Below are positions 8,009 through 64,000 of a stretch of 64,000 bases of DNA, piece after piece. Each line of letters opens with the position of its first letter. Position 1 is the first letter of the stretch. A program made the translations under genes and the position numbers. The notes under the pieces were generated by a model that ran no database searches, was not told the DNA's origin, and saw only the letters and a list, made by a program, of their open reading frames with translations. The stretch spans positions 1 through 64,000 of IMG/VR virus record IMGVR_UViG_3300025930_000007, one strand, 5' to 3'.

Positions 8009-8113
8009 TTGCTGTAAAGCTTGATGCCCTGTAGAATCTCCTAGTCGGAGGTCTCCTCCCCCGGGACCTTCTGGATCCTGTAAACGGACGTCCGCCCAAG
8101 GGAGATTCCCTTG
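8009..8113 (+). promoter_or_regulatory. Promoter plus conserved leader element, copy 3
   Basis: TTGCTG-17-TAGAAT; GGAGGTCTC/CTCCCCC/GGGACCTTC; TCCGCCC at 8091-8097; SD and TTG in a hairpin. Confidence 0.8.
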
Positions 8114-51413: not shown

Positions 51414-51932
51414 ATGCGCTTCGACCTCGTCGCCTTCCTGGGAGGCCTGACTGTTGGAGCCGCGGCTGCGGCTCTATACGGTGCCACACGGAGCACGAAG
51501 CTCGGCTGGAGTGGCGGCGGTGCAGGCGGTGGTCCTGGCGGCGGCGGTAGCTTCGGAGGCAGTCCCAGCGGCTCGGGGGGCTCATCCTATGCCCCCGGTG
51601 GTACAGGAGTCTATTCTGGACCGCCTGGACCCTTCGGTGGAGGGTTCATGGGACCTAGCGTCCTGGAATCGACGCCTTCTGAGGGAGAAGGAGAGATCGG
51701 GCCGATCGTTTCCGTTCCTCCGATCATTCATGACGGAGATGGTAACGGAATATTCGGAGGCTCATTCTTTGGGGTCAACGTGGCCCCTTGGTTCTGGCCT
51801 CTGAACATCGTGCCCCGGAACGACGAGATCATCTGCAAGAAGATTCCAGGCGATCCTGAAGAGACGATGGTATGTAAACGCAGATATCCGGTTCGAGCGG
51901 TGGCTTGGGGGCCACCCGCCGGCTGGCTCTAG
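51414..51932 (+). CDS. N-terminal TM, Gly-rich protein
   Basis: N-terminal hydrophobic helix, 'TKLGW', Gly-rich linker. Confidence 0.7.
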   Translation: MRFDLVAFLGGLTVGAAAAALYGATRSTKLGWSGGGAGGGPGGGGSFGGSPSGSGGSSYAPGGTGVYSGPPGPFGGGFMGPSVLESTPSEGEGEIGPIVSVPPIIHDGDGNGIFGGSFFGVNVAPWFWPLNIVPRNDEIICKKIPGDPEETMVCKRRYPVRAVAWGPPAGWL

Positions 51933-52596: not shown

Positions 52597-53439
52597 ATGA
52601 TCGGCAGCTTCCCTAGTTCGATCCAGGTCGCGCAAACAGCGGAGATTCGGATGCTGCTTCACTCCGGACCACGGCTTCTGCCTCCGCTACCACTCCGTCC
52701 TAAGCTCAGCCGGCGCATGGGCCAGATGGTCGCTTTCGATCCCAAAGTAGACTTCAACCCGGATGTCAAGGTGCAGGTTCCCGTCAACGTGGAACTGGGC
52801 GGCCTTCCGCTTTCGGTTGGCCTATTCTTGGGTTCCGGCCTTTCCTTTCTGATTCGGCCTCAGCTTCAGGAAGGATTCGCCAAAACAGCGGCATTGGTTC
52901 TTGGGGCGGGCCTGGCGGTCGCAGGCATCACGAATCTGATCTTGCCGAAGGCTCAGGCCTCGGCACCCGCGCCCGCAGCACCGAGCTCGACCCCAACAAC
53001 AGCAGCTCCCTCGGCTCCTGGCGGCGGCGGCGCCGTCAGCGCGCCGGCTGGAGTTGCGGTTTCGGACCAGGGGATCTTTAACGGCATCAGTGGGCAGGTG
53101 ACTTATCCCGGAGAGGGTGAATCGGTCAATATCTGGCCGTTGGCTTCGACCTATCCGATACGGGTTCAGGTCTACAATCCATCTGCAGCCTCGGCGACCT
53201 TCTATCTGCAGATCGTCGCAAACGAATCCCCGTTGCCATTCGGCAACGCGGCCCGCACGACGTTCCCCCTGCAAGTCACCGTCGGACCTGGTCAGACGCG
53301 AGATATCGACATCAATATGCCGATCTCGACGTGGGCCTGGAACGTGAAGTACGTGGACGTCGCTCTATCCGTCTATAAGCAACGTATGGCTGGGGAGAAC
53401 CCAGTGCTGATGGCGCAACGCTATCTTGTCGTTTCATAG
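52597..53439 (+). CDS. MGQ-leader two-TM protein with C-terminal Ig-like beta domain
   Basis: 'LSRRMGQ'; 'IRVQVYNP..VTVGPGQTR'. Confidence 0.75.
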   Translation: MIGSFPSSIQVAQTAEIRMLLHSGPRLLPPLPLRPKLSRRMGQMVAFDPKVDFNPDVKVQVPVNVELGGLPLSVGLFLGSGLSFLIRPQLQEGFAKTAALVLGAGLAVAGITNLILPKAQASAPAPAAPSSTPTTAAPSAPGGGGAVSAPAGVAVSDQGIFNGISGQVTYPGEGESVNIWPLASTYPIRVQVYNPSAASATFYLQIVANESPLPFGNAARTTFPLQVTVGPGQTRDIDINMPISTWAWNVKYVDVALSVYKQRMAGENPVLMAQRYLVVS

Positions 53440-53453
53440 GAGAGATTACGGCG

Positions 53454-53879
53454 ATGACACTGACGAAACCTTCCGGCTGGGCCCCCTATAAGAAGGGGTT
53501 GGGCACTTCTCGCGTGTCCATGGGCGCCATGTCCAATGCCGAGACACAGATGCTCGGAGTCGCGGTGCTGTCGGCGATCTCCATCGCAGGCATCCATTCG
53601 GCGATCTGCCCGAGCTACTTCACGATGAAGACGTTCGCGTCGCAGCCTGAGGCCAAGGCTCGCTCGATGGAAGGTCTCTGGATCTCTCTGGGTGTGTCGG
53701 CCCTGACGTCGGCGTCCCTCTACTGGGTCTTCAAGAGCTGGATGCCCGTGATCTTCGCCGGCGCCACCTCGCTCCTGCTCTTCGGCATCGGCGTTGCGGC
53801 GACGAATTCTGAGCCGCCGAAGAACATCCCGCCGATCGAGAAGCAGAGCGTCGTGACCGAGTCAGCGGGCATTCCTTAG
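53454..53879 (+). CDS. MGA-leader three-TM protein
   Basis: 'RVSMGA'; three hydrophobic helices. Confidence 0.75.
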   Translation: MTLTKPSGWAPYKKGLGTSRVSMGAMSNAETQMLGVAVLSAISIAGIHSAICPSYFTMKTFASQPEAKARSMEGLWISLGVSALTSASLYWVFKSWMPVIFAGATSLLLFGIGVAATNSEPPKNIPPIEKQSVVTESAGIP

Positions 53880-53905
53880 ACGGCCAATGTATAATCAGAG
53901 GCGCG

Positions 53906-54715
53906 ATGAATGCATGGCTCGGTCCGGTGGCTCTCAGCCTAGCTGATCGGAGACCATCACTAGGCGGCTTCCGTCGGCCGATCCAGGGCATTTATCGGCC
54001 TTCGGCTGCACGGTCGCATCTGGGTGCCACACAGTCTTTCCCACAGATCACGGCTACTCCGGAGGCACCCAATACCATCACCGGCTTCTCTCCAGAGAGC
54101 GCCAAAGATGGCGTAGTGATTGGGATCGGAGGAATCGGGTTGGCTCTGGTTTCCAGGTTCATTCCTGGAGTCGGCGAACCTGTTGCCCTGGTCGGCGGCG
54201 TCGGAATGATCGGTCTGGGTCTCTACAAGATCTACGAAGCAGTCACCGGTCGAGGAACTCCTACGGTTCAGAGCTTCATCACGCCTCCGGATCAGCAGGT
54301 TAGCGACATCTCCTTCATTACCGGCAAGATCCTTGAGCCGTCCGATAAGGGCCAGGCAGATGTAGGAGCCGGGTGGCAGGCGGTCTTTGAAGGCAAACGT
54401 ACCTTCAAGATCAAGTTCATGGTGACGAATACCGGTCCGAAGCCGATGACCGTCCTTGTCGAATTCCGGACGGAGCAGACTTCCAGGCCGTGGGTGGGAG
54501 ATCCCGAGGTATCCAACTTCTCGACCAGCTACGTCCTTGAACTTTCGCCTGGAGAAAGTAAGGTCATCCCAGGCTACCAGCCGGCCAAGGTTCTGGAATC
54601 CATGCTGCAGATCCAGTCCTATAGAAGCCAGGACATTACGGCGACTCTGCTCGCTCGGACTTCTTCGAGCGACACGGGAAAGAAGCTCGACCAGATCAGT
54701 TTTACAGCTTGGTAA
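53906..54715 (+). CDS. LGA-leader two-TM protein with Ig-like domain (paralog of 52597)
   Basis: 'RSHLGA'; 'IKFMVTNTG..LELSPGESK'; TATAAT upstream. Confidence 0.75.
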   Translation: MNAWLGPVALSLADRRPSLGGFRRPIQGIYRPSAARSHLGATQSFPQITATPEAPNTITGFSPESAKDGVVIGIGGIGLALVSRFIPGVGEPVALVGGVGMIGLGLYKIYEAVTGRGTPTVQSFITPPDQQVSDISFITGKILEPSDKGQADVGAGWQAVFEGKRTFKIKFMVTNTGPKPMTVLVEFRTEQTSRPWVGDPEVSNFSTSYVLELSPGESKVIPGYQPAKVLESMLQIQSYRSQDITATLLARTSSSDTGKKLDQISFTAW

Positions 54716-55669
54716 GTGATGAACGAATGGCTTGGTCCTGTTTCTTTGAGGCTCGTTGATCGTGGTCCTCTCTTTGGGGGCTTCGGATCTCGTATCCAGG
54801 ACATCCGCCAGCCACAGCCTTTTCTCGGCCAGGCAAGATTGAAGCAGTCCTATGAACTTGGACGGCCGGTCGCGCATCTGGATCAACCTCCGGACTGCTG
54901 CAATAGTCCGGATGGAACCAAATGCTTCGATCACTCGACCGGCGAATGCATCAATACCTGGAACAGCACTGTGGCAACTCCAAATGCTCCTGATTGCGTT
55001 CAGGACACTCGTGGAGAATTGGTTCATCCCTATTGCTATACCCCTCCTGTAGCTCCCACTCGCATGGAAGGAAGAGTTCGTAGAGTTCCTTTCTTCTCTC
55101 TGGGGGCTTGGGTCAACGATAAACCGGCGAAGTGCTGCAATAGGACTCATCCGGATGGAACGGCCTATCTGGAATGCTGCGAACCACTATGGAATGGTCC
55201 GGGATCAGATCCGAGCTTCCCGAGCTGCGACTCTCCGGATAATCCCTGCCCCTCCACGGGAGCCGCCCCGACTCCGACCCCGACCCCGACTCCGACTCCG
55301 ACTCCGACCCCGACTCCGACTCCGACCCCGACTCCGACTCCGACCCCCACCCCAACGCCAACACCGACACCTACACCAAGCCCGACCCCGACGTCTACAA
55401 CTGGTCCAATTCCAACGGATAATACGACCTCGGCTGGCAATGAACCGATACCGGCTACCGGAGGCGGCTCTTTTGTTCCCGTGCTTCCGCCTCGGCAGAG
55501 CATGACGACGGCATCTCCTCCGACCGGAGCCTTCCCTGGTCAACCATTTGCCGCCATGCGCCCTCCTCAGAAGCCTGTTCCGATCGCCAAGGCTCCTGCT
55601 CCACTTCCGCCGCCATGTCCGCTTGGACCGGTCCCTCTTCGTAAGTGGATCGAAGGCTGCATGGGGTAA
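54716..55669 (+). CDS. LGQ-leader Cys-rich protein with a (PT)n stalk
   Basis: Two CCN-containing Cys-rich modules; about 20 PT repeats. Confidence 0.75.
   Translation: MMNEWLGPVSLRLVDRGPLFGGFGSRIQDIRQPQPFLGQARLKQSYELGRPVAHLDQPPDCCNSPDGTKCFDHSTGECINTWNSTVATPNAPDCVQDTRGELVHPYCYTPPVAPTRMEGRVRRVPFFSLGAWVNDKPAKCCNRTHPDGTAYLECCEPLWNGPGSDPSFPSCDSPDNPCPSTGAAPTPTPTPTPTPTPTPTPTPTPTPTPTPTPTPTPTPTPSPTPTSTTGPIPTDNTTSAGNEPIPATGGGSFVPVLPPRQSMTTASPPTGAFPGQPFAAMRPPQKPVPIAKAPAPLPPPCPLGPVPLRKWIEGCMG
55268..55393 (+). repeat. Hexamer tandem repeat (CCGACY)n encoding Pro-Thr
   Basis: Directly visible; degenerate toward the 3' end. Confidence 0.85.
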
Positions 55670-56296: not shown

Positions 56297-56588
56297 CCGG
56301 ATGAAGTAAAAATTTTGGCCCGTCGGAGAAGTCTCCGACGGGCCGTGCTGAGAAGTCCTCAGTAGGAGCGATGGGGTACGCCCCCGTGCCTACCGAGAAG
56401 TGTGCTGCGTGGTTAAGACGCAGCGTTTTGACAATCGGGCTTGAATCTAAAGAGCGAAAGGCCGGGGGCACCGGCCGGGAAAGCTGGTGCCCCCGGACCT
56501 CATTCTATCTCTTCGTCCCAAAACTTCAAGCTGTCACTTGAGCGGGTGGCGGTTTGGCATTTGGCGCCCTGGGCTCAGGGCGCCTTTC

Positions 56589-56948
56589 GGGGCCGAAATA
56601 GTATCGACGGAGATCCAAGACAGGAAAGCTGCGTGTCGTGGACGCCGGTTGGCCACGTAAAACATCCGGTAAAAACCTAACTGGCAAGAGCCAGCTCGCT
56701 CGCGCGGCCTAGCCGTGTCGTCGCCCCTAGTGACGCCGATAGCCTGGGTGCGACGTTAATAATCGGTCGCTACCCGTAAGGTGATTCCTACCTTCCGGGG
56801 ATAAGAATAAGTGGAACGTGAAGCCCGCAAACCTGCTGGTGAGCGAGCGGAGCTTCGAGAGCCGCAAGGCAGAATCATCAGATACACACGTAGATGCCCC
56901 TAGACTGTGATCTTCGGACGGGGGTTGCAAAGCCCCCCGGCTCCACCA
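56589..56948 (+). ncRNA. ssrA: tmRNA with tag peptide (A)GKSQLARAA
   Basis: 5' GGGGCCGAAA..TCGAC and 3' CGGCTCCACCA with G3:U70; TAACT-GGC resume context, tag at 56683-56712. Confidence 0.9.
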
Positions 56949-56949
56949 T

Positions 56950-57023
56950 GCGGTCAAGATGTTACAGTAGCATGCCAGTTTTCCAAACTGGACGCGCGGG
57001 TGCGACTCCCGCTGACCGCACCA
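56950..57023 (+). tRNA. tRNA-Gly(TCC)
   Basis: Cloverleaf; CCAGT-TTTCCAA-ACTGG; CCA end. Confidence 0.9.
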
Positions 57024-57138
57024 ATATTTTTAGAAATAGAATGAGCGGCGCTTTTCGCCTACAATAAGAGGGTACGACCGGGGCTCTCCTCCAGAGGTTG
57101 GCGGAGATCGACATCTTGAAGAATGTCTTGGGGGCCCT

Positions 57139-57396
57139 GTGGTGGAGTTTCCGGAAGACAAGACACTTCAACCCGGATCCTGGTACCTCTGGCGCACCGG
57201 GAAGCAACGCATCTTCATTGCCTGCCCGCTCTGCAGCCAGGTCGTCTCGATCGATCCGGAGGAGATCGAGATTCTGGAGGACGGCAGATTGTCCAAGATC
57301 ATCGACTGTCCCAACATGATCTGCGATTTCACTGATGCAATACGGCTGCAGGGCTGGGGTGAACAGGGATCATCTTCCAGTCTTCCGAAAGTTTAG
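57139..57396 (+). CDS. Small Cys-rich hypothetical protein
   Basis: 'IACPLC..CPNMIC..IRLQGW'; start uncertain. Confidence 0.5.
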   Translation: MVEFPEDKTLQPGSWYLWRTGKQRIFIACPLCSQVVSIDPEEIEILEDGRLSKIIDCPNMICDFTDAIRLQGWGEQGSSSSLPKV

Positions 57397-57398
57397 AT

Positions 57399-57472
57399 CG
57401 GGGCGTGTTGTAGCGGCAGCAAGCGACGTTCCCAACGTTGAGGTGTGGGTTCGACTCCCATCGCCCCGTCCA
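57399..57472 (+). tRNA. tRNA-Gly(CCC)
   Basis: CGACG-TTCCCAA-CGTTG; GTTCGA; CCA. Confidence 0.9.
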
Positions 57473-57480
57473 ATTTTGCT

Positions 57481-57600
57481 GTGAATCAAGACCGTGGGTC
57501 ACCCAAGGGACGCTGCAAGGTGACATCTGGCCCGGCAGCCGTGGAGTCCTCCCGGCCGGGGAATAACTGAGGACCTAGGCGTCCCACTATCTTGATTCAC
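57481..57600 (+). ncRNA. Unidentified end-closed structured RNA
   Basis: GTGAATCAAGA..TCTTGATTCAC terminal stem between tRNAs. Confidence 0.5.
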
Positions 57601-57602
57601 AT

Positions 57603-57673
57603 AGGCCACGATCCAGCGATCAGCTTGGTCTCCAAAACCGAGCAGTGGGGGGCGGCACCCCGGTGGCCTGCCA
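57603..57673 (+). tRNA. tRNA-Trp(CCA), atypical D and T arms
   Basis: AGGCCAC/GTGGCCT acceptor; CTCCAAA loop; CCA. Confidence 0.7.
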
Positions 57674-57681
57674 GAATTCAT

Positions 57682-57755
57682 GGTCCCTGAGTATGTCGGC
57701 AGTACGCTACCTTGTCACGGTAGAAGGACGGGTTCGACTCCCGTAGGGATCGCCA
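57682..57755 (+). tRNA. tRNA-Asp(GTC)
   Basis: CTACC-TTGTCAC-GGTAG. Confidence 0.9.
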
Positions 57756-57763
57756 AAAGAAAA

Positions 57764-57840
57764 CCCCCGGAGGCCGAAGTCGTGGAGGCGCCGGCTTGTC
57801 ACGCCGGAGAAAGCGGGTGCGACTCCCGTCCGGGGGGCCA
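57764..57840 (+). tRNA. tRNA-Asp(GTC), second copy
   Basis: CCGGC-TTGTCAC-GCCGG. Confidence 0.85.
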
Positions 57841-57856
57841 ACCTTAGTCTCGATAC

Positions 57857-57931
57857 TCCCAGATCGTCTAACTGGTAGGACGACAGACTCTGAATCTGTA
57901 AATTGGGGTTCGAATCCCTATCTGGGAACCA
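57857..57931 (+). tRNA. tRNA-Gln(CTG)
   Basis: ACAGA-CTCTGAA-TCTGT. Confidence 0.9.
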
Positions 57932-57934
57932 GTC

Positions 57935-58249
57935 TTATGCGCCGAGATGCTTGGCGATCAGGGCCTCGAGCTGTTCCCTGGTCATCTCGCCTTCAGTCCG
58001 ATGGACCTCCTGGCCCTCCTTGAAGAAGACGAGTGCCGGCAGGCCGTCGATGTCGTAGCCGTTGGCCGACTTCTTGCACTGGTCGATCCGGGCGCCCACG
58101 ATCAGGACGGAATCGTTGTAATCGTTGGCAGCCTGCTCGATCACGGGCTTGAAGTCGACGCAATGGGTGCATTCGGGGTGCCAGAAGTCGACGATCGCGA
58201 GCGGCGCCCCCAGGACTTCGCTGAAGTTCTTGTCCGTCACGGAAAGCAT
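57935..58249 (-). CDS. Thioredoxin family protein
   Basis: 'IVDFWHPECTHC', 'IDGLPALVFFKEG..R..G'; AGGAG SD. Confidence 0.85.
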   Translation of the reverse strand: MLSVTDKNFSEVLGAPLAIVDFWHPECTHCVDFKPVIEQAANDYNDSVLIVGARIDQCKKSANGYDIDGLPALVFFKEGQEVHRTEGEMTREQLEALIAKHLGA

Positions 58250-58281
58250 TCGAATTCTCCTAATCTCCAAGCATTATACAA

Positions 58282-58356
58282 GCCGGTCTAGCTCAGCAGT
58301 AGAGCGCCCGTCTGAAAAGCGGGAGGTGGCGGGTGCGACACCCGCGGCCGGCACCA
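58282..58356 (+). tRNA. tRNA-Phe(GAA)
   Basis: CCCGT-CTGAAAA-GCGGG. Confidence 0.9.
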
Positions 58357-58363
58357 AATATTT

Positions 58364-58438
58364 GGGGGCATCGTCCAATTGGTAGGACACCAGCATGGCA
58401 TGCTGGGGATCGGGGTTCAAGTCCCCGTGCTTCCACCA
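58364..58438 (+). tRNA. tRNA-Ala(GGC)
   Basis: CCAGC-ATGGCAT-GCTGG; G3:U70. Confidence 0.9.
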
Positions 58439-58446
58439 GAAAACTT

Positions 58447-58522
58447 GCGCAGGAGAGGCACGGTGACCTCACCAGTCTCATAAGCTGGGGATAGCGGGTT
58501 CGACTCCCGCCTGTCGCTACCA
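58447..58522 (+). tRNA. tRNA with CAT anticodon (Met or Ile2), bulged acceptor stem
   Basis: CCAGT-CTCATAA-GCTGG; GTTCGA; CCA. Confidence 0.7.
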
Positions 58523-58538
58523 AGATTCCCTTATACGA

Positions 58539-58615
58539 CGCGGGGTGGAGTAGCCCGGTAACTCGCCAGGCTCATAACCTGGAAACCGCAGGTTCAAATC
58601 CTGCCCCCGCAACCA
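58539..58615 (+). tRNA. Initiator tRNA-fMet(CAT)
   Basis: CGCGGGG..CCCCGCAACCA with C1:A72 mismatch. Confidence 0.9.
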
Positions 58616-58622
58616 AAAATTC

Positions 58623-58748
58623 GGAGGCTGACTGACGAGGGTACTTCGCTGGTTCAATTCCAGCCTGCCCGACTAGGGCGCTCGGATCCCGAGCTCCCCA
58701 GCGGGCAGGCGCCCGATGCCTGGGCACCCCTTGTCTCCAATCGCCTCC
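58623..58748 (+). ncRNA. Y-RNA (YrlA)-like RNA 1
   Basis: GGAGGC/GCCTCC closing stem, GAGGGTACTTC, then T arm, acceptor-like stem and D-like arm. Confidence 0.6.
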
Positions 58749-58757
58749 AAAATCTTC

Positions 58758-58887
58758 AGGGGCTGCAGAGCGAGCTTACTTCACCAGACTCTTAATCTGG
58801 AGGACCTGGTTCGAGTCCAGGCTTCGGCCGAAAGGTCGATGTGGTGTATCGGTAGCACACTCAGTGGCTTGTTCGACAATTGCCCCT
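58758..58887 (+). ncRNA. Y-RNA-like RNA 2 containing a circularly permuted tRNA-Lys(CTT)-like module
   Basis: AGGGGC/GCCCCT stem, TTACTTC, anticodon arm, T arm, GAAA-capped acceptor stem, D arm. Confidence 0.65.
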
Positions 58888-58897
58888 ATAAAAATTC

Positions 58898-59082
58898 GCG
58901 GGCTGATGGATCGAGGTTACTTCGCCCTACAAAACCCCCGAAAAGGAAGGTCCGTCGAACCTTCCTCTACCGCGAAAGCGAACGGGTTGAGCGTGAGGTG
59001 CTTGTGGTAACACGCCGGCGCAAGCCGGAGAAGGAGGTTCGACTCCTCCCAAATCGACATGGCCTTGGCCGTAATTGCCCGC
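58898..59082 (+). ncRNA. Y-RNA-like RNA 3
   Basis: GCGGGC/GCCCGC stem, GAGGTTACTTC, D arm + GCAA-capped stem + T arm. Confidence 0.6.
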
Positions 59083-59091
59083 ATAATATTC

Positions 59092-59182
59092 GAGCGCTGA
59101 CTAGCGGCGTTACTTCGGAGCCTGGGCTCGAAGCCCGACACGGCGAAAGCCGTGGGCAAGTCGCTGCTTAATGATTGCGCTC
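59092..59182 (+). ncRNA. Y-RNA-like RNA 4 (short)
   Basis: GAGCGC/GCGCTC stem, GCGTTACTTC, two small hairpins. Confidence 0.55.
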
Positions 59183-59186
59183 ACAA

Positions 59187-59261
59187 GGGGCCATAGCTCA
59201 GCAGGGAGAGCGCCGGTTTCGCATACCGGAGACGCGAGTTCGATTCTCGCTGGTTCCACCA
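59187..59261 (+). tRNA. tRNA-Ala(CGC)
   Basis: CCGGT-TTCGCAT-ACCGG; G3:U70. Confidence 0.9.
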
Positions 59262-59282
59262 AAATTTAGCATCATCAGACCT

Positions 59283-59358
59283 GGGCCGGCATGTACCGTA
59301 GTGGCGACACTGCCTTGCAAGCAGCGTGTGGTGGGTGCGACTCCCATCCGGTCCACCA
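59283..59358 (+). tRNA. tRNA-Ala(TGC)
   Basis: CTGC-CTTGCAA-GCAG; G3:U70. Confidence 0.8.
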
Positions 59359-59365
59359 AATATTC

Positions 59366-59492
59366 GAGAGCTGCAGATTGAGGTTACTTCTCTACCACTT
59401 ACGAGACGTGGTGTAGCGGTCTGCACACCGGCCAAAAGCCGGAGGTGGTCGTCCGACTCGACCCGTTGTTGCCTTGATCATCAATTGCTCTC
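59366..59492 (+). ncRNA. Y-RNA-like RNA 5
   Basis: GAGAGC/GCTCTC stem, GAGGTTACTTC, D arm + anticodon-less stem + T-like arm. Confidence 0.6.
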
Positions 59493-59496
59493 AAAT

Positions 59497-59583
59497 GGGG
59501 TCGCTTGGAGAGAAGGATCTCCACCTGTCTGTAAAACAGGCGTCCGTTTGGACTAAGCGGCGCGATACCGCACGGCCCCACCA
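59497..59583 (+). tRNA. tRNA-Tyr(GTA)
   Basis: CCTGT-CTGTAAA-ACAGG; long variable arm. Confidence 0.8.
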
Positions 59584-59584
59584 C

Positions 59585-59660
59585 TGCCTCGTCTGTCTAA
59601 TTGGTAGGACGCCGGTCTTTGAAGCCGGAGATCTCGGTTCGAATCCGAGCGAGGCAACCA
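59585..59660 (+). tRNA. tRNA-Gln(TTG)
   Basis: CCGGT-CTTTGAA-GCCGG. Confidence 0.9.
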
Positions 59661-59673
59661 AAGCTCTCTAGAT

Positions 59674-59749
59674 GCGGCCGTGGTGTAGCTTGGTAGCACG
59701 AGAACTTGCCATGTTCTAAGCACGGGTTCAAATCCCGTCGGCCGCTCCA
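59674..59749 (+). tRNA. tRNA-Gly(GCC)
   Basis: AGAAC-TTGCCAT-GTTCT. Confidence 0.9.
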
Positions 59750-59760
59750 ATATTTCCCAT

Positions 59761-59834
59761 CGGCTCGTAGTTCAACAGCAGAACGTTCGCTTGATAAGCG
59801 AAAAACGCAGGTGCGACTCCTGCCGGGCCGACCA
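59761..59834 (+). tRNA. tRNA-Ile(GAT)
   Basis: TTCGC-TTGATAA-GCGAA. Confidence 0.85.
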
Positions 59835-59837
59835 TAC

Positions 59838-59913
59838 GGTGGCCGTGGTGTAATGGTTTGCACATCTGGTTGTGGCCCAGAGGGTGCGGGTTCGATCCCC
59901 GTCGGTCACCCCA
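59838..59913 (+). tRNA. tRNA-His(GTG)
   Basis: G-1, TCTGG-TTGTGGC-CCAGA, C73. Confidence 0.9.
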
Positions 59914-59936
59914 AAAAATAATGCTACAATGGCTGG

Positions 59937-60134
59937 GTGCCATATGTAGAACCGTCCTGGCGACAATGGCCTCAGTGGAGATGGCTCTCCCGGACTCTTT
60001 GCTTCTTCGGAAACCATCACTGGATGAGGAGCAAAAGCCTCCAGAATCTTCCGATCGCCTGCGCGGTCTGCTCGAAGAAGACGAAGCATTTCAATACGTA
60101 CATCAAGCTCGCCAAGAAACACGCCGGGCTGTAG
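59937..60134 (+). CDS. Small Cys/His hypothetical protein
   Basis: 'LCFFGNHHW..CAVC'; its stop overlaps the tRNA-Pro 5' end. Confidence 0.5.
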   Translation: MPYVEPSWRQWPQWRWLSRTLCFFGNHHWMRSKSLQNLPIACAVCSKKTKHFNTYIKLAKKHAGL

Positions 60135-60200
60135 GGTAGCGGCCAACCCGCCTGCTTCGGGAGCAGGAAATCGCGAGTTCGAATCTCGCCAGCCCGACCA
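60125..60200 (+). tRNA. tRNA-Pro(CGG)
   Basis: CCTGC-TTCGGGA-GCAGG. Confidence 0.9.
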
Positions 60201-60203
60201 TTC

Positions 60204-60280
60204 CAGGGACATGGGGAGATAGCGCCCCACCTGTTTCGGATACAGGCATAGGCCCGGTGCGAGTCCGGGGTCCCTGACCA
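60204..60280 (+). tRNA. tRNA-Pro(CGG), divergent
   Basis: CCTGT-TTCGGAT-ACAGG (A37). Confidence 0.75.
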
Positions 60281-60289
60281 AAAACTCAT

Positions 60290-60366
60290 CAGGCACAGGG
60301 TCAGATAGCGGGCCGCCTGCCTTGGAAGCAGGAGATAGACTGGTGCAAGTCCAGTGTGCCTGACCA
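60290..60366 (+). tRNA. tRNA-Pro(TGG), divergent
   Basis: CCTGC-CTTGGAA-GCAGG (A37). Confidence 0.75.
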
Positions 60367-60379
60367 ATCTTTTTAATCT

Positions 60380-60455
60380 CGGGCTCAAGGGAAGGTAGCG
60401 TCCCGCCTGTTTGGGGTACAGGAGCAGGCCGGTGCAAGTCCGGCGAGCCCGACCA
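60380..60455 (+). tRNA. tRNA-Pro(GGG)
   Basis: CCTGT-TTGGGGT-ACAGG. Confidence 0.8.
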
Positions 60456-60462
60456 AAATCAT

Positions 60463-60543
60463 CCGGAGGCAGGTCGGCTGACGGCTGGCTGGGTCGCTCC
60501 CAGCATGACAGCCGGTTGGGTTCGGTTCCCGAACTCCGGTCCA
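60463..60543 (+). ncRNA. tRNA-sized CCA-ending RNA without a normal cloverleaf
   Basis: CCGGAG/CTCCGG-T-CCA ends; one long internal hairpin. Confidence 0.4.
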
Positions 60544-60617
60544 CGGCGCGTATTTCAATAGCAGAATATCTGCGTGACATGCAGAAGATGGGGGTGCGAT
60601 TCCCTCCGCGCCGACCA
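60544..60617 (+). tRNA. tRNA-Val(GAC)
   Basis: TCTGC-GTGACAT-GCAGA. Confidence 0.85.
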
Positions 60618-60640
60618 ATCTTGTTTGCTATGATTTCGCC

Positions 60641-60838
60641 ATGGGACCCAACAAAGACGAAATCCTTCGGAACGCCAAGAAGATGGCCGAGGAAGAAAAG
60701 AAGCGACGTGCCAGCATAGCGACGGAGAAGCCCCTTGGGAGAATGCAGTCCAGGATGCCGATCGGCTGCTGGATGTGGATCCTGGCCGCGGCCGCGCTGA
60801 TCATCTGGCTCATCAAAAAGTACGGACCTGGGATATAA
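60641..60838 (+). CDS. Small membrane protein
   Basis: Charged N-terminus plus TM 'WMWILAAAALIIWLI'. Confidence 0.6.
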   Translation: MGPNKDEILRNAKKMAEEEKKRRASIATEKPLGRMQSRMPIGCWMWILAAAALIIWLIKKYGPGI

Positions 60839-60947
60839 TCCTTGCGACGGCTGAGATGGACCCCTAACTCTGGTGGCGGGGTTTCGGGTCGCGCGTCGTG
60901 AGGGTGTGTGCCTTCACGGAGGGTGTTTCGGGGCCCCGCTCCCATTT

Positions 60948-61023
60948 GCCGGCGTAGTTTAGCAGCTCTGAATGCCAGTTCGGTAAACTGGAGGTGTGGG
61001 GGCAGCACCCACCGCCGGCTCCA
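60948..61023 (+). tRNA. tRNA-Thr(GGT), atypical (C33, non-canonical T loop)
   Basis: CCAGT-TCGGTAA-ACTGG. Confidence 0.75.
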
Positions 61024-61194
61024 GAAATAAAAAACCACGGCGACAGGCCGTGGCATTTGAGGGATCGGCGAATCCCGAAATTGGGATTCGTGCGAACAAG
61101 ATACGGGAAACAATAGCGAGGTGTCCAGAAAAGAAAAAGCCCGGGGAACACCCCCGGGCCTCGAGCGGGATTCGGTGCTTGCAGTGTACCACAT

Positions 61195-61269
61195 GCTGGC
61201 ATAGCTCAATAGTAGAGCACCTGTTTTGTAAACAGGCGGTTGCCGGTGCAAGTCCGGCTGCCAGCTCCA
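61195..61269 (+). tRNA. tRNA-Thr(TGT)
   Basis: CCTGT-TTTGTAA-ACAGG. Confidence 0.9.
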
Positions 61270-61281
61270 AATATTCATCAC

Positions 61282-61355
61282 GCCGGCCTAGTTCAACAGT
61301 AGAATGCTCGCTTCATAAGTGAGAGATCCCAGGGCAGCTCTGGGGGCCGGTACCA
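61282..61355 (+). tRNA. tRNA with CAT anticodon (Met or Ile2)
   Basis: CTCGC-TTCATAA-GTGAG. Confidence 0.75.
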
Positions 61356-61387
61356 TTTCATCTACCCAAAGGAAGGATAGGAACACC

Positions 61388-61564
61388 GTGAAGTACATCG
61401 TGGAGGCCCGCGCCGGCGACCGCTGGGTGACGCTGGGCCAGCCGTACATCCTCAAGGAAAAGGCCATGGCGGCCGAGGAAGCGGCTCTGGAAAGCACGCT
61501 CTGGGAAGACGCCAGGATCCTGGTCGTGAACGATCGGCAGCAGATCGTCAAGATCATCGACTGA
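61388..61564 (+). CDS. Small hypothetical protein
   Basis: GTG at 61388 after AGGA. Confidence 0.6.
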   Translation: MKYIVEARAGDRWVTLGQPYILKEKAMAAEEAALESTLWEDARILVVNDRQQIVKIID

Positions 61565-61568
61565 CCTC

Positions 61569-61660
61569 GGAGGGGTTGGTACATAGGCAGGTCCGCTCGT
61601 TTCGAAAACGAGTAGGTCTCGAAAGGGGCCTTGCCGGTTCGACTCCGGTCCCCTCCTCCA
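61569..61660 (+). tRNA. tRNA-Ser(CGA)
   Basis: CTCGT-TTCGAAA-ACGAG; long variable arm. Confidence 0.85.
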
Positions 61661-61721
61661 GAATTCTCGATTGATGCAGCGCCTCGAGGCCGGTATACTT
61701 TCCTTATTGGGGGGTATCAAG

Positions 61722-61973
61722 ATGATCGGTTACCAGGCTCCTGCATATCGTCCGGCGCAGCGGTCTCAAATGGGCGCGATCTCGTCCATGACCGGCACGG
61801 ACTGGTTGCTGCTGCTCGGCGGCGCCGTGGTCGGCGGCGCAGGCATCAATGGGCTCCGGAATCAGTTCACGGGCCCGGAGAAGGCCAATGCGATCGGCGT
61901 GCTCGTCGACCTGGTCCTGACGGGCGTCGGCCTCACGCTCTTCATCCAGAAGGGCTCACAGGCGATCGCGTAA
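61722..61973 (+). CDS. MGA-leader two-TM protein inside the tRNA island
   Basis: MIGYQAPAYRPAQRSQMGA; own promoter TTGATG-17-TATACT at 61671-61699. Confidence 0.75.
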   Translation: MIGYQAPAYRPAQRSQMGAISSMTGTDWLLLLGGAVVGGAGINGLRNQFTGPEKANAIGVLVDLVLTGVGLTLFIQKGSQAIA

Positions 61974-62093
61974 GGCGGCGAGAATCCATCTGCTCATGCG
62001 ACGGAGATTCTCTAAAAAGAAACACCCAGGGCTCTTCGAAGGAAGAGTCCCGGGTGCGAGAGAGGGAAACCTTTCGGTACTGTAATTATACCC

Positions 62094-62184
62094 GGAGATG
62101 AAGGCAGTGGGCATGCCACCACGTCTTGAAAACGTTGGACCCGGGAAACCGGGGCGGTGGGTTCGAGTCCCCCCGTCTCCGCCA
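62094..62184 (+). tRNA. tRNA-Ser(TGA)
   Basis: ACGT-CTTGAAA-ACGT; long variable arm; G73. Confidence 0.8.
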
Positions 62185-62195
62185 AAAATCAGTGC

Positions 62196-62322
62196 AGATC
62201 GATCCGCCGTTGCTCACTGGCAGCACGAGGAATGCGCGAAGCTGGCGTGTGAATCGTGAAGGGCGTGACGGCTTCCGGAGCCTTGGGGTGCAAACACATC
62301 CTCAGCGGCGGGTCAATCTCCA
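62196..62322 (+). ncRNA. Unidentified end-closed structured RNA
   Basis: AGATCGATCCGCCGTTG..CAGCGGCGGGTCAATCT long terminal stem. Confidence 0.45.
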
Positions 62323-62325
62323 TTT

Positions 62326-62416
62326 GGAGGGGTTGGGCATTGGCAGGCCCACCTCGTTGGAAACGAGACAGCCGGCGCAAGCCGGCTTGCAGGTTCGACC
62401 CCTGTCCCCTCCGCCA
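62326..62416 (+). tRNA. tRNA-Ser(GGA)
   Basis: CTCG-TTGGAAA-CGAG; long variable arm. Confidence 0.85.
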
Positions 62417-62419
62417 GAA

Positions 62420-62905
62420 TTACTTGAAGATCGCGTAGAGGATCCCGGCGACCGCAACGGCGCCGATCGCATAAGGCGCGATCTCCTTCGCCGTGGGAGC
62501 GGCTGGCGTCGGTTCCTGAGCGACCAGAACGGTCGTCCGGGGCTGAGGATAGGCCGTCACGGGGAAGAGGTAGGGATACGGATAATAGACATTCCAGGGG
62601 TTCGGCCCAGGCGGGCACGGACCATTTCTCTTCTCGAAGGTGATCACGCCGTCCGTGTTGCACTCGAACATCTGGTAGCAGATGCTGTTCTCCACGAAAG
62701 GCTTCCCAACCGGCTTGCAGGTCTTTACGGGAGGAGGAGGCGGCGGCGGGGGCGGCGGCTCCGGTTCCGGAGCAGGTTCTGGTTCAGGAGCTGGAGGTGG
62801 CTCGGGCATCGGGGCCGGCTCAAGTGGCGCTTCATCGACGCCGAGCCGGAAAGGTGTCCCGAACAGGTATCCGGTTCTACGAAGTGAGACCAGACGCATG
62901 ACCAT
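62420..62905 (-). CDS. LG-leader Pro-rich membrane protein
   Basis: AAGGAGG SD; 'PFRLGV', poly-Pro, Cys module, C-terminal TM. Confidence 0.75.
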   Translation of the reverse strand: MVMRLVSLRRTGYLFGTPFRLGVDEAPLEPAPMPEPPPAPEPEPAPEPEPPPPPPPPPPVKTCKPVGKPFVENSICYQMFECNTDGVITFEKRNGPCPPGPNPWNVYYPYPYLFPVTAYPQPRTTVLVAQEPTPAAPTAKEIAPYAIGAVAVAGILYAIFK

Positions 62906-62982: not shown

Positions 62983-63714
62983 GTGAGAATTGCGATCATC
63001 TCGGATACCCATCTGAGGCACCGGAAATATCCGATCGATGTTCCTGAATGTGATCTGCTGATCCACTGCGGCGATGCCATGATCGAGGGTACGGCCGCTG
63101 AGGTCAGGATGTTCGCGTCCTGGTTCGAAGCTCTCAAAGCAAAATATAAGGTCTTCGTCGCGGGAAATCACGACTGGCTTTTCGAGAAAGACAATGCCCT
63201 GGCAAGAAGCCTTCTCCCCAAGGGCGTCATCTATCTCCAAGACAGCCAGATCGAGATCGAGGGCCTCAAGATCTACGGAAGTCCCTGGCAGCCGGAGTTC
63301 TGCGAATGGGCTTTCAACCTGAAGCGGGGCTGGCCTCTCCGGAAGAAGTGGGAGCTGATCCCGGCCGGAATCGACATCCTGATCACGCATGGACCGCCGC
63401 TCGGGATCCTGGATTTCAGCAAGTTCGGAGACGAGCATGTCGGCTGCGCGGATCTCCGGCAGGAACTTCAGCGGATCAAGCCGAAGGTGCATTGCTTCGG
63501 CCACATCCACGGAGATTATGGGACGGCCACCTGGGCAAATACGCTCTTCGTGAACGCCTCTCTCTGCGACGAGGCATACGTCGCGAATCATCCTCCGATC
63601 CTGATCGAGATGGAAGCCGGCAAGGCTCCCGTGCTTCTGAAGGCGCCTGGTCTCCCGCCTCCCACGAAGGGAGCCGTTCCCATCAGGGCAACTGGAAAAG
63701 CTCTCTGGACCTAG
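62983..63714 (+). CDS. Calcineurin-like metallophosphoesterase
   Basis: SDTH, HCGD, GNHD, THGPP and FGHIH motifs. Confidence 0.92.
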   Translation: MRIAIISDTHLRHRKYPIDVPECDLLIHCGDAMIEGTAAEVRMFASWFEALKAKYKVFVAGNHDWLFEKDNALARSLLPKGVIYLQDSQIEIEGLKIYGSPWQPEFCEWAFNLKRGWPLRKKWELIPAGIDILITHGPPLGILDFSKFGDEHVGCADLRQELQRIKPKVHCFGHIHGDYGTATWANTLFVNASLCDEAYVANHPPILIEMEAGKAPVLLKAPGLPPPTKGAVPIRATGKALWT

Positions 63715-63954: not shown

Positions 63955-64000
63955 AAATTTCTGATTCGCTTTTTTGTTCTTGACAGAAAGCGATTCATCC

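What the first reader, a model, noticed from the sequence alone, without database searches (positions are those of the whole stretch)
58623..59492. Five related Y-RNA-like ncRNAs carrying different tRNA fragments, interleaved with tRNAs
Seen: five units (58623, 58758, 58898, 59092, 59366) share a 6-bp closing stem ending GC, an internal loop (5' UG[A/C], 3' [A/G]AU[U/C]), a second stem and a conserved UACUUC linker. Their payloads vary: T arm then D arm (permuted), D-stem-T with the anticodon loop replaced by GCAA or CAAAA, or plain hairpins. Known: bacterial YrlA Y RNAs join a Ro60/Rsr-binding stem to a tRNA-mimic domain and also occur in some phages. Inference: a modular adaptor or decoy RNA family. 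No Ro60/TROVE gene is in this window.
Basis: partly seen in the sequence, partly recalled or inferred. Interest (0 to 1): 0.8.

Follow-up and report, generated by a model that had tools for sequence, protein, structure and literature searches.

The report
Phage Y-RNA family beside Ro60
The five units are real members of a family of at least twelve Y-RNA-like genes in a 266-kb soil phage, whose Ro60/Rsr protein gene lies only 1.26 kb past the end of the window; this is the largest set of Y RNAs on one shared scaffold that I could find described.

Summary
Five units (58623-58748, 58758-58887, 58898-59082, 59092-59182, 59366-59492, + strand) share one scaffold: a 6-bp closing stem ending in GC, a loop with 5' UG[A/C] and 3' AU[U/C], an 8-bp second stem with a conserved G·U pair, and then (U/G)UACUUC. 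Both stems covary.

The window is the first 64 kb of IMG/VR contig 3300025930_000007 (266,490 bp). The "missing" Ro60 gene is at contig 65257-66981, on the same strand. It has TROVE and Ro60-vWA domains and matches Xenopus Ro60 at E = 1e-20. Seven more units fill the 1.1 kb directly upstream of it, behind a near-consensus promoter that the window end cuts.

Related phages (thioredoxin 59-90% identical) keep this layout with at least 4 to 10 units each. Rsr loci at 33-38% identity carry the same architecture built from different stem sequences.

The payloads are modular:
- YrlA-type permuted tRNA bodies (T arm, capped hairpin, D arm)
- Yrn1-type bodies (D arm, stem, T arm)
- plain hairpins
- no payload at all

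Best reading: Y RNAs of a phage Ro60 particle, with a constant protein-binding stem and swappable effector domains. Expression and binding were not tested. The kind is known; this is a new, expanded variant.

The parts
58623..58748 (+). U1: Y-RNA-like unit. Scaffold plus T arm (5 bp, loop UUCAAUU), a long capped hairpin and a further hairpin.
   Evidence: Fold z -5.9. CM 43.7 bits, E 7e-8. T arm found. Orthologs in L121, L122 and L124 keep the scaffold and T arm but replace or shorten the long hairpin.
58758..58887 (+). U2: full YrlA-type unit. Scaffold, anticodon-arm-like hairpin (loop CUCUUAA), T arm, GAAA-capped acceptor-like hairpin, D arm.
   Evidence: CM 41.5 bits, E 2.4e-7. Consensus fold of 4 orthologs gives 44 pairs; the anticodon-like loop is the most variable part. 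The Rfam tRNA hit of 30.5 bits covers only the anticodon-like and T arms.
58898..59082 (+). U3: scaffold, extra 5' hairpins, then a tRNA body in normal order (D arm, 5-bp stem capped by GCAA, T arm).
   Evidence: CM 27.9 bits, E 5e-4. Rfam tRNA partial alignment at 58992-59057. The L124 ortholog has a compensatory change in the closing stem, GCGGGC/GCCCGC to GCAGGC/GCCTGC. The unit at the same position in L122 carries a different payload.
59092..59182 (+). U4: short unit. Scaffold, degenerate T arm and GAAA-capped hairpin; no D arm.
   Evidence: Rfam YrlA RF02553 matched over the full model, 30.1 bits, E 2.7e-4, below the gathering score of 69. CM 57.1 bits, but U4 was in the training set.
59366..59492 (+). 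U5: scaffold plus a tRNA body in normal order (D arm, 5-bp stem with CAAAA loop, T arm).
   Evidence: CM 43.0 bits, E 1e-7. Orthologs in L122 and L124 show compensatory changes in the closing stem (GAGAGC/GCTCTC to GAGGGC/GCCCTC), the second stem and the capped stem. Their T loops are canonical, UUCGACU and UUCAACU.
58539..58615 (+). tRNA-Met (CAU) immediately 5' of U1; part of the same-strand array in which the units are embedded.
   Evidence: ARAGORN; Rfam tRNA 63.8 bits.
59187..59261 (+). tRNA-Ala (CGC) immediately 3' of U4.
   Evidence: ARAGORN; Rfam tRNA 65.9 bits.
59282..59355 (+). tRNA-like gene between tRNA-Ala and U5, ending in CCA; not called by ARAGORN.
   Evidence: Only a weak Rfam tRNA-Sec match, 22.3 bits; sequence read.
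57938..58249 (-). Thioredoxin gene inside the tRNA array; used as bait to find related phages.
   Evidence: Pfam Thioredoxin 5.4e-21. Seventeen relatives at 59-90% identity.
62983..63714 (+). Calcineurin-type metallophosphoesterase between the tRNA array and the Rsr-proximal Y-RNA array; this position is kept in all relatives.
   Evidence: Pfam Metallophos 3.2e-13. PHROG metallo-phosphoesterase 8.8e-17. Synteny.
63980..64000 (+). First part of a near-consensus sigma-70-type promoter (TTGACA, 16 nt, TATACT; contig 63980-64007), cut by the window end. It heads the operon U6-U12 plus rsr. In contig coordinates, which continue the window's: U6 64162-64414, U7 64473-64604, U8 64615-64729, U9 64740-64867, U10 64945-65042, U11 65053-65137, U12 65148-65207, rsr 65257-66981.
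   Evidence: Promoter scan, 11 of 12 matches. Units. Rsr: TROVE 5.8e-21 and vWA_Ro60 2.5e-11, Xenopus Ro60 1YVP E 1.1e-20.
56589..56948 (+). tmRNA gene at the head of the same-strand tRNA and Y-RNA island.
   Evidence: Rfam RF00023, 116.3 bits; conserved in relatives.

Best explanation
The five units are genes for bacterial-type Y RNAs (YrlA/YrlB/Yrn1-like) that belong to a Ro60/Rsr ribonucleoprotein encoded by a 266-kb soil phage. The phage has at least twelve such genes. Five are embedded in its tRNA array; this is the finding. Seven are in tandem directly upstream of rsr.

Each RNA has a constant module formed by its two ends: a 6-bp stem ending in GC, a loop with 5' UG(A/C) and 3' AU(U/C), an 8-bp stem with an invariant G·U, and a single-stranded (U/G/A)UACUUC. 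By analogy with characterised Y RNAs, this is inferred to be the Rsr-binding site.

Each RNA also has a variable apical module. This can be a permuted tRNA body as in YrlA, a tRNA body in normal order with the anticodon loop replaced by a tetraloop as in Deinococcus Yrn1, non-tRNA hairpins, or nothing.

Inferred mechanism: the units are transcribed with the tRNAs or with rsr as polycistronic precursors. They are cut out at the A/U-rich 10-11-nt spacers and bound by the phage Rsr ring. The variable module then decides what the particle does. It may tether Rsr to a host exoribonuclease such as PNPase or to tRNA-binding enzymes, gate the Rsr cavity, or mimic tRNA.

Shown here: the family, its covarying structure, its genomic linkage to rsr, and its modular evolution. 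Inferred only: expression, processing, Rsr binding, and the partners.
For: 1. The scaffold is real and under structural selection.
2. Compensatory changes occur between orthologs in U3 and U5.
3. An Rsr gene with TROVE and Ro60-vWA domains lies on the same strand 5.8 kb downstream of U5. It aligns over its length with Xenopus and human Ro60, Deinococcus Rsr and Thermus phage phiLo Ro60.
4. Seven further units lie 49-1,095 nt upstream of rsr, behind a near-consensus promoter. A good Shine-Dalgarno sequence precedes rsr.
5. The layout of tmRNA, tRNAs, thioredoxin, units, tRNAs, metallophosphoesterase, units, rsr and DnaJ is kept in every relative with enough sequence. Each has at least 4 to 10 units.
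6. Loci whose Rsr is 60-62% identical (L132, L136) have units directly upstream of rsr.
7. AT-rich loci at 33-38% identity (L127, L149) have two units each in that place. These keep the same architecture and UUACUUC but use unrelated stem sequences.
8. Loci at 35-38% identity (L138, L142, L139, L150) carry YrlA-like RNAs with GAGGCG...YUACUUC next to Rsr.
9. U4 and U7 match Rfam YrlA end to end at 30 bits, like the Bxz1 Y RNA-like sequence at 32.5 bits.
10. The YUAY motif of YrlA is present (PMC4201824).
11. Precedents in the literature: Deinococcus Yrn1 and Yrn2 are made as one precursor with tRNA-Asp, and species carry several Y RNAs with different modules (PMC4201824). Thermus phage phiLo has two Y-like RNAs upstream of its Ro60, which bind it and host PNPase (PMC12135203).
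Against: 1. There is no evidence of expression. The only RNA-labelled runs holding relatives are probably DNA, and their contigs carry no strand or end information.
2. No binding data exist.
3. The published GNCGAAN0-1G motif is not present as such. The corresponding place reads G-N-G-C-U-G-A/C, and a GNCG(A/C/G)GG sits in the second stem.
4. No unit reaches the Rfam YrlA gathering score (30 bits against 69).
5. The Rfam metazoan Y_RNA model gives no hit at E <= 10.
6. My covariance model does not detect the Bxz1 Y RNAs.
7. U1-U5 lie 5.8-6.6 kb from rsr, outside the 4-kb criterion used by Chen et al. 2014.
8. Only 77 kb of the 266-kb contig could be read.
Confidence: 0.75

Rival explanations
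1. The units are tRNA mimics or decoys that work without Rsr. Stable tRNA-like bodies would soak up host tRNA-targeting defence nucleases or tRNA-modifying enzymes. The shared stem would be only a stability or processing cassette, and the neighbouring rsr gene would act on other RNAs.
For: Seven of 12 units carry a canonical T arm and several a D arm. The anticodon-like loop of U2 is the fastest-changing part among orthologs, as expected of an arms race. The neighbourhood looks like a tRNA-maintenance island: tmRNA, at least 35 tRNAs, a metallophosphoesterase, and a polynucleotide-kinase-like P-loop protein among tRNA-Lys genes.
Against: Units with no tRNA-like payload at all (U8, U11, U12) keep the scaffold just as strictly. 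The scaffold follows the Rsr gene down to 33-38% protein identity while its stem sequences change completely. The array abuts rsr in one apparent operon.
Confidence: 0.12
2. The units are cis-acting punctuation for long tRNA and rsr precursors: structured spacers that direct RNase cleavage or protect ends, with no function as free RNAs.
For: Units are separated by very regular A/U-rich spacers of 10-11 nt (for example AUAAAAAUUC) and sit between tRNAs.
Against: Punctuation would not need conserved T and D arms, twelve different payloads, or an invariant single-stranded UACUUC. Seven units in a row with no tRNA between them punctuate nothing. Homologous RNAs in other organisms are stable and protein-bound (PMC4201824).
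Confidence: 0.05
3. The units are decayed tRNA duplicates (pseudogenes) or a selfish repeat that spread within the array.
For: They contain tRNA fragments. Copy number varies between close relatives: a soil variant lacks U1 and U2, and another has a different unit after tRNA-Met.
Against: ARAGORN calls no tRNA in them. The conserved part is the non-tRNA scaffold. That scaffold covaries, is kept at 59-90% marker-protein identity, and is never found away from the rsr neighbourhood in the 77 kb read.
Confidence: 0.03

Closest known systems
YrlA / YrlB Y RNAs of Salmonella Typhimurium, Mycobacterium smegmatis and mycobacteriophages (Chen et al. 2014, PMC4201824; Rfam RF02553)
   Same: Encoded upstream of, and on the same strand as, a Ro60/Rsr gene. 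The ends pair into a long stem with an internal loop. A YUAY motif follows the stem. The effector domain is a permuted tRNA body (optional V hairpin, T arm, capped acceptor-like hairpin, D arm), as in U2, U7 and U9. Hairpin-only Y RNAs accompany it, as YrlB does (U11, U12). U4 and U7 match the Rfam model end to end.
   Different: There are twelve genes rather than one or two. Five of them lie inside a tRNA array 5.8-6.6 kb from rsr. The GNCGAAN0-1G motif is replaced by GC-UG-A/C at that place. (U/G)UACUUC is invariant. Scores are far below the Rfam gathering score. Some payloads are not in the YrlA order at all.
Deinococcus radiodurans Yrn1 / Yrn2 (PMC4201824)
   Same: Yrn1 has its tRNA-like arms in the D, anticodon-like stem, T order with a shortened loop, as in U3 and U5. 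Yrn1 and Yrn2 are made as one precursor with tRNA-Asp, a precedent for Y RNAs embedded among tRNAs.
   Different: Chen et al. argued that Yrn1 and YrlA arose independently. Here both topologies sit on one and the same scaffold in one genome. No sequence similarity to Yrn1 was tested, because no Yrn1 sequence was available from a tool.
Thermus phage phiLo Ro60 with Yrl1 and Yrl2 (PMC12135203; PDB 9KOP, 9L5Y)
   Same: A phage-encoded Ro60 with Y-like RNAs directly upstream. The protein is a detectable homolog of the one here (E 1.8e-16). The published model is that phage Ro60 plus Y RNA capture host PNPase.
   Different: phiLo has two RNAs of stem-bulge-stem form with a CGAA motif. No tRNA-like payloads or tRNA-array context are described.
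Small stable RNAs in the phage T4 tRNA gene cluster (species 1 and 2; recalled from memory, not checked here)
   Same: Non-tRNA stable RNAs co-encoded and co-processed with phage tRNAs.
   Different: T4 has no Ro60 gene, and no sequence or structural relation was tested. This is a lead only.

Membership tests
Bacterial Y RNA, YrlA type (Chen et al. 2014; Rfam RF02553) | Encoded on the same strand as, and within about 4 kb of, a Ro60/Rsr gene | tested here: met
   All 12 units are on the rsr strand. U6-U12 lie 49-1,095 nt upstream of rsr. The five units of the finding lie 5.8-6.6 kb upstream. They miss the 4-kb rule but share the scaffold with U6-U12.
Bacterial Y RNA, YrlA type | 5' and 3' ends pair into a long stem with an internal loop (the Ro60-binding region) | tested here: met
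   Present in all units by MFE. Covariation: 9 of 14 pairs change on both sides, 0 of 500 shuffles reach the observed values.
Bacterial Y RNA, YrlA type | GNCGAAN0-1G motif near the 5' end | tested here: inconclusive
   No exact match. At the aligned place the units read G-N-G-C-U-G-A/C, and the second stem reads GNCG(A/C/G)GG. More distant Rsr-linked RNAs read GAGGCG there, which bridges the two forms.
Bacterial Y RNA, YrlA type | YUAY after the stem, opening the variable region | tested here: met
   UUAC, GUAC or AUAC in 11 of 12 units; AUUC in U6.
Bacterial Y RNA, YrlA type | tRNA-like domain in the order T arm, acceptor-like hairpin, D arm | tested here: inconclusive
   Met in U2, U7 and U9. 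Partial in U1, U4 and U10 (no clear D arm). Reversed order (D, stem, T) in U3 and U5. Absent in U6, U8, U11 and U12.
Bacterial Y RNA, YrlA type | Reaches the Rfam RF02553 gathering score (69 bits) | tested here: not met
   U4 scores 30.1 bits and U7 30.3 bits; the others do not hit. For calibration, the Bxz1 Y RNA-like sequence upstream of Ro scores 32.5 bits, and Rsr-adjacent RNAs in L138 and L142 score 37-40 bits. The cut-off therefore excludes phage members in general.
Bacterial Y RNA, YrlA type | Bound by Rsr and stabilised by it; carries tRNA-type modifications; RNase P or CCA-adding substrate | not testable with these tools
   Needs RIP, EMSA, Northern blots and modification mapping.
Metazoan Y RNA (Rfam RF00019) | Match to the covariance model | tested here: not met
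   No Y_RNA hit at E <= 10 in 56400-62600 or 58600-59600.
tRNA gene or pseudogene | Cloverleaf with a 7-bp acceptor stem formed by the ends, in the order D, anticodon, T | tested here: not met
   ARAGORN calls none of the five. The one Rfam tRNA hit above threshold (U2, 30.5 bits against 29) lacks the D arm and borrows scaffold bases as an acceptor stem.
Ro60 / Rsr protein (partner gene) | TROVE HEAT-repeat ring plus C-terminal vWA domain | tested here: met
   Pfam TROVE 5.8e-21 and vWA_Ro60 2.5e-11. NCBIfam Rsr 2.3e-23, below its equivalog cut-off. PDB 1YVP 1.1e-20 over residues 58-504; also 2NVO and 9KOP.

The most novel reading that the evidence does not exclude
One phage Ro60 ring is served by a library of at least twelve interchangeable adaptor RNAs. 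These include tRNA-body mimics in both known topologies. They would let the phage point a single RNA-surveillance or decay particle at many different host RNA enzymes, or shield its large tRNA set from several tRNA-targeting defence nucleases. New specificities would arise simply by swapping the apical cassette on a fixed protein-binding stem.
Probability: 0.25. Interest if true: 0.85.

Novelty: new variant of a known kind. Interest (0 to 1): 0.6.

Why it matters
It is still unclear what the effector domains of bacterial Y RNAs do, and in particular why they imitate tRNA. Characterised organisms offer two to four Y RNAs each. This phage offers a natural series of twelve on one constant scaffold. 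The series runs from an empty scaffold, through single hairpins, to complete tRNA bodies in two topologies, and close relatives show cassettes gained, lost and swapped.

That makes the question testable. One protein and twelve defined RNAs can be compared for binding, partners and effect on infection. The finding also shows that the YrlA and Yrn1 topologies, thought to have arisen independently, can share one Rsr-binding module.

Current annotation misses such RNAs for two reasons: the Rfam cut-off is too high for phage members, and the search radius around Ro60 has been 4 kb. For phage biology, the finding adds Ro60 particles to the tRNA-maintenance islands of very large phages.

Tried and rejected
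- Megablast and blastn of 58600-59500 against 50,697 phage records found nothing relevant; only tRNA-sized matches appeared.
- An exact-pattern scan of IMG/VR (scaffold 5' motif, gap, AATTGC) returned more than 118 single hits consistent with chance and was not used.
- IMG/VR holds no relative of the thioredoxin or the Rsr other than the source contig itself.
- The genome collection gave one distant Rsr, in a contig binned as a Woesearchaeota MAG. It turned out to be useful.
- Reads could be laid only on Logan contigs of soil runs labelled metatranscriptomic but probably DNA. They show relatives and structural variants, not expression.
- The 150-nt leader between the promoter and U6 is not significantly structured (z = -1.25) and is not counted as a unit.
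- A kink-turn reading of the internal loop was considered and dropped, because the 3' strand has no G·A pair partners.
- Base-pairing of UACUUC with the payload was considered. Partners exist in U3 and U4 but not in general, and in the minimal units the motif lies in the apical loop, so it is treated as single-stranded.
- Two reviews on bacterial Y RNAs and the supplementary tables of Chen et al. 2014 are not held. The statement that twelve exceeds known repertoires therefore rests on the papers I could read.
- Pfam and PHROG scans of ten large window ORFs found collagen repeats and glycosyltransferases, but no RtcB, RNA ligase or PNPase.
Full report
**Where the window comes from.** A thioredoxin gene inside the tRNA array (57938-58249, minus strand) is found in IMG/VR only on contig IMGVR_UViG_3300025930_000007. 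That contig is 266,490 bp long, and the gene sits at the same coordinates as in the window. The window is therefore the first 64 kb of that contig, and contig coordinates simply continue the window's. Nearly identical sequence is present in about 15 rhizosphere and soil metagenome runs. The region from 56.6 kb onward is a same-strand island: a tmRNA (56589-56948, 116 bits), then tRNAs running to at least 76.8 kb. ARAGORN finds 33 tRNAs between 57.4 and 76.8 kb, and Rfam adds a few more.

**The observation.** The five units are at the stated places. Each folds by minimum free energy into the same outer shape, and the folds are more stable than shuffles, with z from -1.9 to -5.9. The shared scaffold, read 5' to 3', is:
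- six paired bases ending in GC
- UG(A/C)
- a purine-rich strand of the type NGGUCGAGG
- (U/G)UACUUC
- the payload
- CCUUGGCC-type strand
- a few bases ending in AU(U/C)
- the six complementary bases starting with GC

The 5' signature alone occurs five times in this 870-bp stretch, against 0.06 expected (the fifth copy has one more spacer base). A descriptor that also requires the 3' closure finds these five, nothing else in the window, and nothing in 50 shuffles. In five related loci, 41 of 42 hits to the 5' signature have a perfect closure.

On an alignment of 13 short units, 90.7% of the cells in the two helices are paired, against 79% after shuffling partners and 46-56% after sliding them. 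Nine of 14 pairs change on both sides. One pair is a G·U in 10 of the 13 aligned units; the three exceptions reflect alignment shifts. A covariance model built from that alignment recovers U1, U2, U3 and U5 at E = 7e-8, 2.4e-7, 5e-4 and 1e-7, with no other hit in the window. U4 was in the training set.

**The missing protein is just outside the window.** The thioredoxin has 17 relatives at 59-90% identity. Every contig with enough flanking sequence shows a gene with TROVE and Ro60-vWA domains a few kb away, on the strand of the tRNA array and beyond a metallophosphoesterase. In our contig the metallophosphoesterase is at window 62983-63714.

The locus fetched around the thioredoxin reaches 68.2 kb and contains a 574-aa ORF at contig 65257-66981 on the + strand. 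Its matches are:
- TROVE 5.8e-21 and vWA_Ro60 2.5e-11
- the NCBIfam Rsr model, 2.3e-23
- the PHROG RNA-binding protein family, 6.9e-42
- Xenopus Ro60 (1YVP, E 1.1e-20, residues 58-504), human RO60, Deinococcus Rsr and Thermus phage phiLo Ro60

**Seven more units in front of rsr.** The 1.5 kb between the metallophosphoesterase and rsr holds a near-consensus promoter (TTGACA, 16 nt, TATACT; contig 63980-64007, cut by the window end). A leader of about 150 nt without significant structure follows. Then come seven units of the same scaffold in tandem:

| Unit | Contig coordinates |
|---|---|
| U6 | 64162-64414 |
| U7 | 64473-64604 |
| U8 | 64615-64729 |
| U9 | 64740-64867 |
| U10 | 64945-65042 |
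| U11 | 65053-65137 |
| U12 | 65148-65207 |

Most are separated by 10-11-nt A/U-rich spacers such as AUAAAAAUUC. U12 ends 49 nt before the rsr start codon, which has a good Shine-Dalgarno sequence. U7 matches Rfam YrlA at 30.3 bits. A strong hairpin follows rsr. No unit is found in the 10 kb after rsr. The phage thus has at least twelve units in the 77 kb I could read.

**Linkage to rsr in other genomes.** The close relatives L121, L122, L124 and L125 keep units both in the tRNA array and in front of rsr, with at least 8, 10, 10 and 4 respectively. A metagenome scan with an Rsr alignment gave 22 loci.
- Where Rsr is 58-62% identical and upstream sequence exists (L132, L136), the model finds units directly upstream on the same strand.
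- Two AT-rich loci at 38% and 33% identity (L127, binned as a Woesearchaeota MAG, and L149) each have two small units in that place. They keep the same order: closing stem, UG, second stem, (U/A)UACUUC, payload, return strands. Their stem sequences are unrelated, for example GGAGAAG/CUUCUCC.
- Loci at 35-38% identity (L138, L142, L139, L150) carry one to three RNAs next to rsr that read GAGGCG...(U/A/C)UACUUC. Three of these (one in L138, two in L142) hit Rfam YrlA at 37-40 bits. In L142 they are again interleaved with tRNAs and a tmRNA.

The scaffold therefore travels with this protein while its paired bases are free to change. That is what a protein-binding module is expected to do.

**Relation to known Y RNAs.** Chen et al. 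2014 (PMC4201824) defined YrlA by the following features:
- location within 4 kb of Ro60 on the same strand
- a GNCGAAN0-1G motif near the 5' end
- a YUAY that opens the variable region
- a permuted tRNA-like domain (V, T, acceptor-like stem AS, D)

They reported YrlA in 254 bacteria and 22 phages. YUAY is present here (UUAC, GUAC, AUAC). The GNCGAA motif is not present as such: at the aligned place the units read GC-UG-A/C, and a GNCG(A/C/G)GG lies in the second stem.

Rfam's gathering score of 69 bits is not reached. It is also not reached by the Y RNA-like sequence upstream of Ro in mycobacteriophage Bxz1 (32.5 bits), a member of the phage group those authors reported. The cut-off therefore says little about phage members. 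My model does not detect the two Bxz1 Y RNAs, so this is a distinct subfamily.

**Payloads.**

| Units | Payload |
|---|---|
| U2, U7, U9 | Complete YrlA order: small or anticodon-arm-like hairpin, T arm with a canonical or near-canonical 7-nt loop, GAAA-capped hairpin, D arm |
| U1, U4, U10 | T arm (degenerate in U4) and a capped hairpin, without a clear D arm |
| U3, U5 | A tRNA body in normal order: D arm, a 5-bp stem whose anticodon loop is replaced by GCAA or CAAAA, then a T arm. This is the topology Chen et al. describe for Deinococcus Yrn1 |
| U8, U11, U6 | Only non-tRNA hairpins; U6 has about 190 nt of them |
| U12 | Bare scaffold closed by a 20-nt loop that begins with AUACUUC |

Chen et al. 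concluded that YrlA and Yrn1 acquired tRNA likeness independently. Here both arrangements sit on one scaffold in one genome.

**Modular evolution.**
- Between orthologs the scaffold and T arms are kept. Meanwhile the long hairpin of U1 is replaced or shortened.
- The unit at the U3 position in L122 has a different payload and a different closing stem.
- The anticodon-like loop of U2 differs in each relative: CUCUUAA, CUCUUGA, CUCAUAA, CUACUAA.
- Soil runs hold 90-95% identical relatives with structural variants. One joins the tRNA-Met end directly to U3, skipping U1 and U2. One skips or replaces 58928-59004 inside U3. One has a different unit, ending in CCUACUUCG, after the tRNA-Met.

**Mechanism.** Shown: a covarying RNA family, its linkage to rsr, and cassette-like payloads. 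From established work:
- Y RNAs bind the outer surface of the Ro60 ring through the stem formed by their ends.
- They can block or gate the central cavity.
- Through the other module they tether Rsr to PNPase in Deinococcus and Salmonella.
- Deinococcus Yrn1 and Yrn2 are cut from a precursor that also contains tRNA-Asp.
- M. smegmatis YrlA is cut by RNase P in vitro.
- Thermus phage phiLo Ro60 binds its two Y-like RNAs and host PNPase.
(PMC4201824, PMC12135203)

I therefore infer that the twelve RNAs are released from the tRNA and rsr precursors at the A/U-rich spacers and are bound by the phage Rsr through the constant module. I further infer that each payload gives the particle a different partner or a different way of mimicking tRNA.

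The neighbourhood fits an RNA-maintenance role. It holds a tmRNA, a near-complete tRNA set, a calcineurin-type phosphoesterase, a P-loop protein that matches phage polynucleotide kinases (3.7e-10) among the tRNA-Lys genes, a peptide deformylase and a DnaJ protein. No RtcB, RNA ligase or PNPase was seen in what I could read.

**Limits.** No expression, processing or binding evidence exists. The RNA-labelled runs are probably DNA and are available only as contigs. Seventy-one per cent of the contig was not readable with these tools. The host is unknown. The claim that twelve exceeds known repertoires rests on the papers held here: vertebrates have two to four, the characterised bacteria at least two, and phiLo two.

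**Verdict.** The kind of system (phage Ro60 with Y RNAs that mimic tRNA) is known. Four things are new:
- a distinct scaffold signature
- the size of the family
- its partial placement inside the tRNA array, beyond the usual search radius
- the coexistence of both tRNA-like topologies, plain hairpins and an empty scaffold on one binding module

Noticed in passing
window 56589-56948: A tmRNA gene (Rfam 116 bits) heads the tRNA island and directly abuts a tRNA at 56950-57020. It is conserved in the relatives.
   Followed up: partly
window 59282-59355 and 59497-59584: Two tRNA-like genes ending in CCA that ARAGORN does not call. The first has a UGC anticodon-like loop. The second has a GUA loop, a long variable arm and an odd T loop. 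They flank U5.
   Followed up: no
window 51634-51725: ARAGORN reports a 'tRNA-???' with a four-base anticodon. It lies inside an ORF (51414-51932) and is probably a false call.
   Followed up: no
window 1102-3165, 8111-10156, 12303-14645, 16519-17709, 18567-20918: Five ORFs with collagen triple-helix repeats, probably fibre proteins. The one at 18567-20918 scores 128 bits.
   Followed up: no
window 26470-30105: A 1,211-aa protein with four family-2 glycosyltransferase domains.
   Followed up: no
window 54716-55669: An ORF with a long Pro-Thr dipeptide repeat. It lies after three ORFs (52597-54715) whose translations look hydrophobic or secreted by eye; no tool was run on them, and they have no family match.
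   Followed up: no
L126:14081-14575 (contig 69337-69831): A P-loop protein (AAA_33; PHROG polynucleotide kinase 3.7e-10) lies between the tRNA-Lys(UUU) and tRNA-Lys(CUU) genes. Together with the metallophosphoesterase at 62983-63714 it could heal broken RNA ends.
   Followed up: partly
L126:16349-21500 (contig 71.6-76.8 kb): A peptide deformylase, a class II ribonucleotide reductase, a GDP-mannose 4,6-dehydratase-family enzyme and a sugar nucleotidyltransferase follow the tRNA island.
   Followed up: no
window 58776-58800 and orthologs (alignment A2): The 7-nt loop of the anticodon-arm-like hairpin of U2 differs in each of four relatives, while the rest of the RNA is nearly invariant. This indicates either no constraint or diversifying selection.
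   Followed up: partly
L142:3270-6000: A contig whose Rsr is only 37% identical also has two YrlA-like RNAs interleaved with tRNAs and a tmRNA upstream of rsr. The Y-RNA, tRNA and tmRNA association therefore recurs in unrelated large phages.
   Followed up: partly
L144:7546-7812: A HEARO RNA (112 bits) lies directly after a 28%-identical Rsr homolog.
   Followed up: no
contigs carrying P0001: In the closest relatives (thioredoxin 90% identical), a 161-aa fragment similar to histidyl-tRNA synthetase sits next to the thioredoxin. The window has only tRNAs at that place.
   Followed up: no
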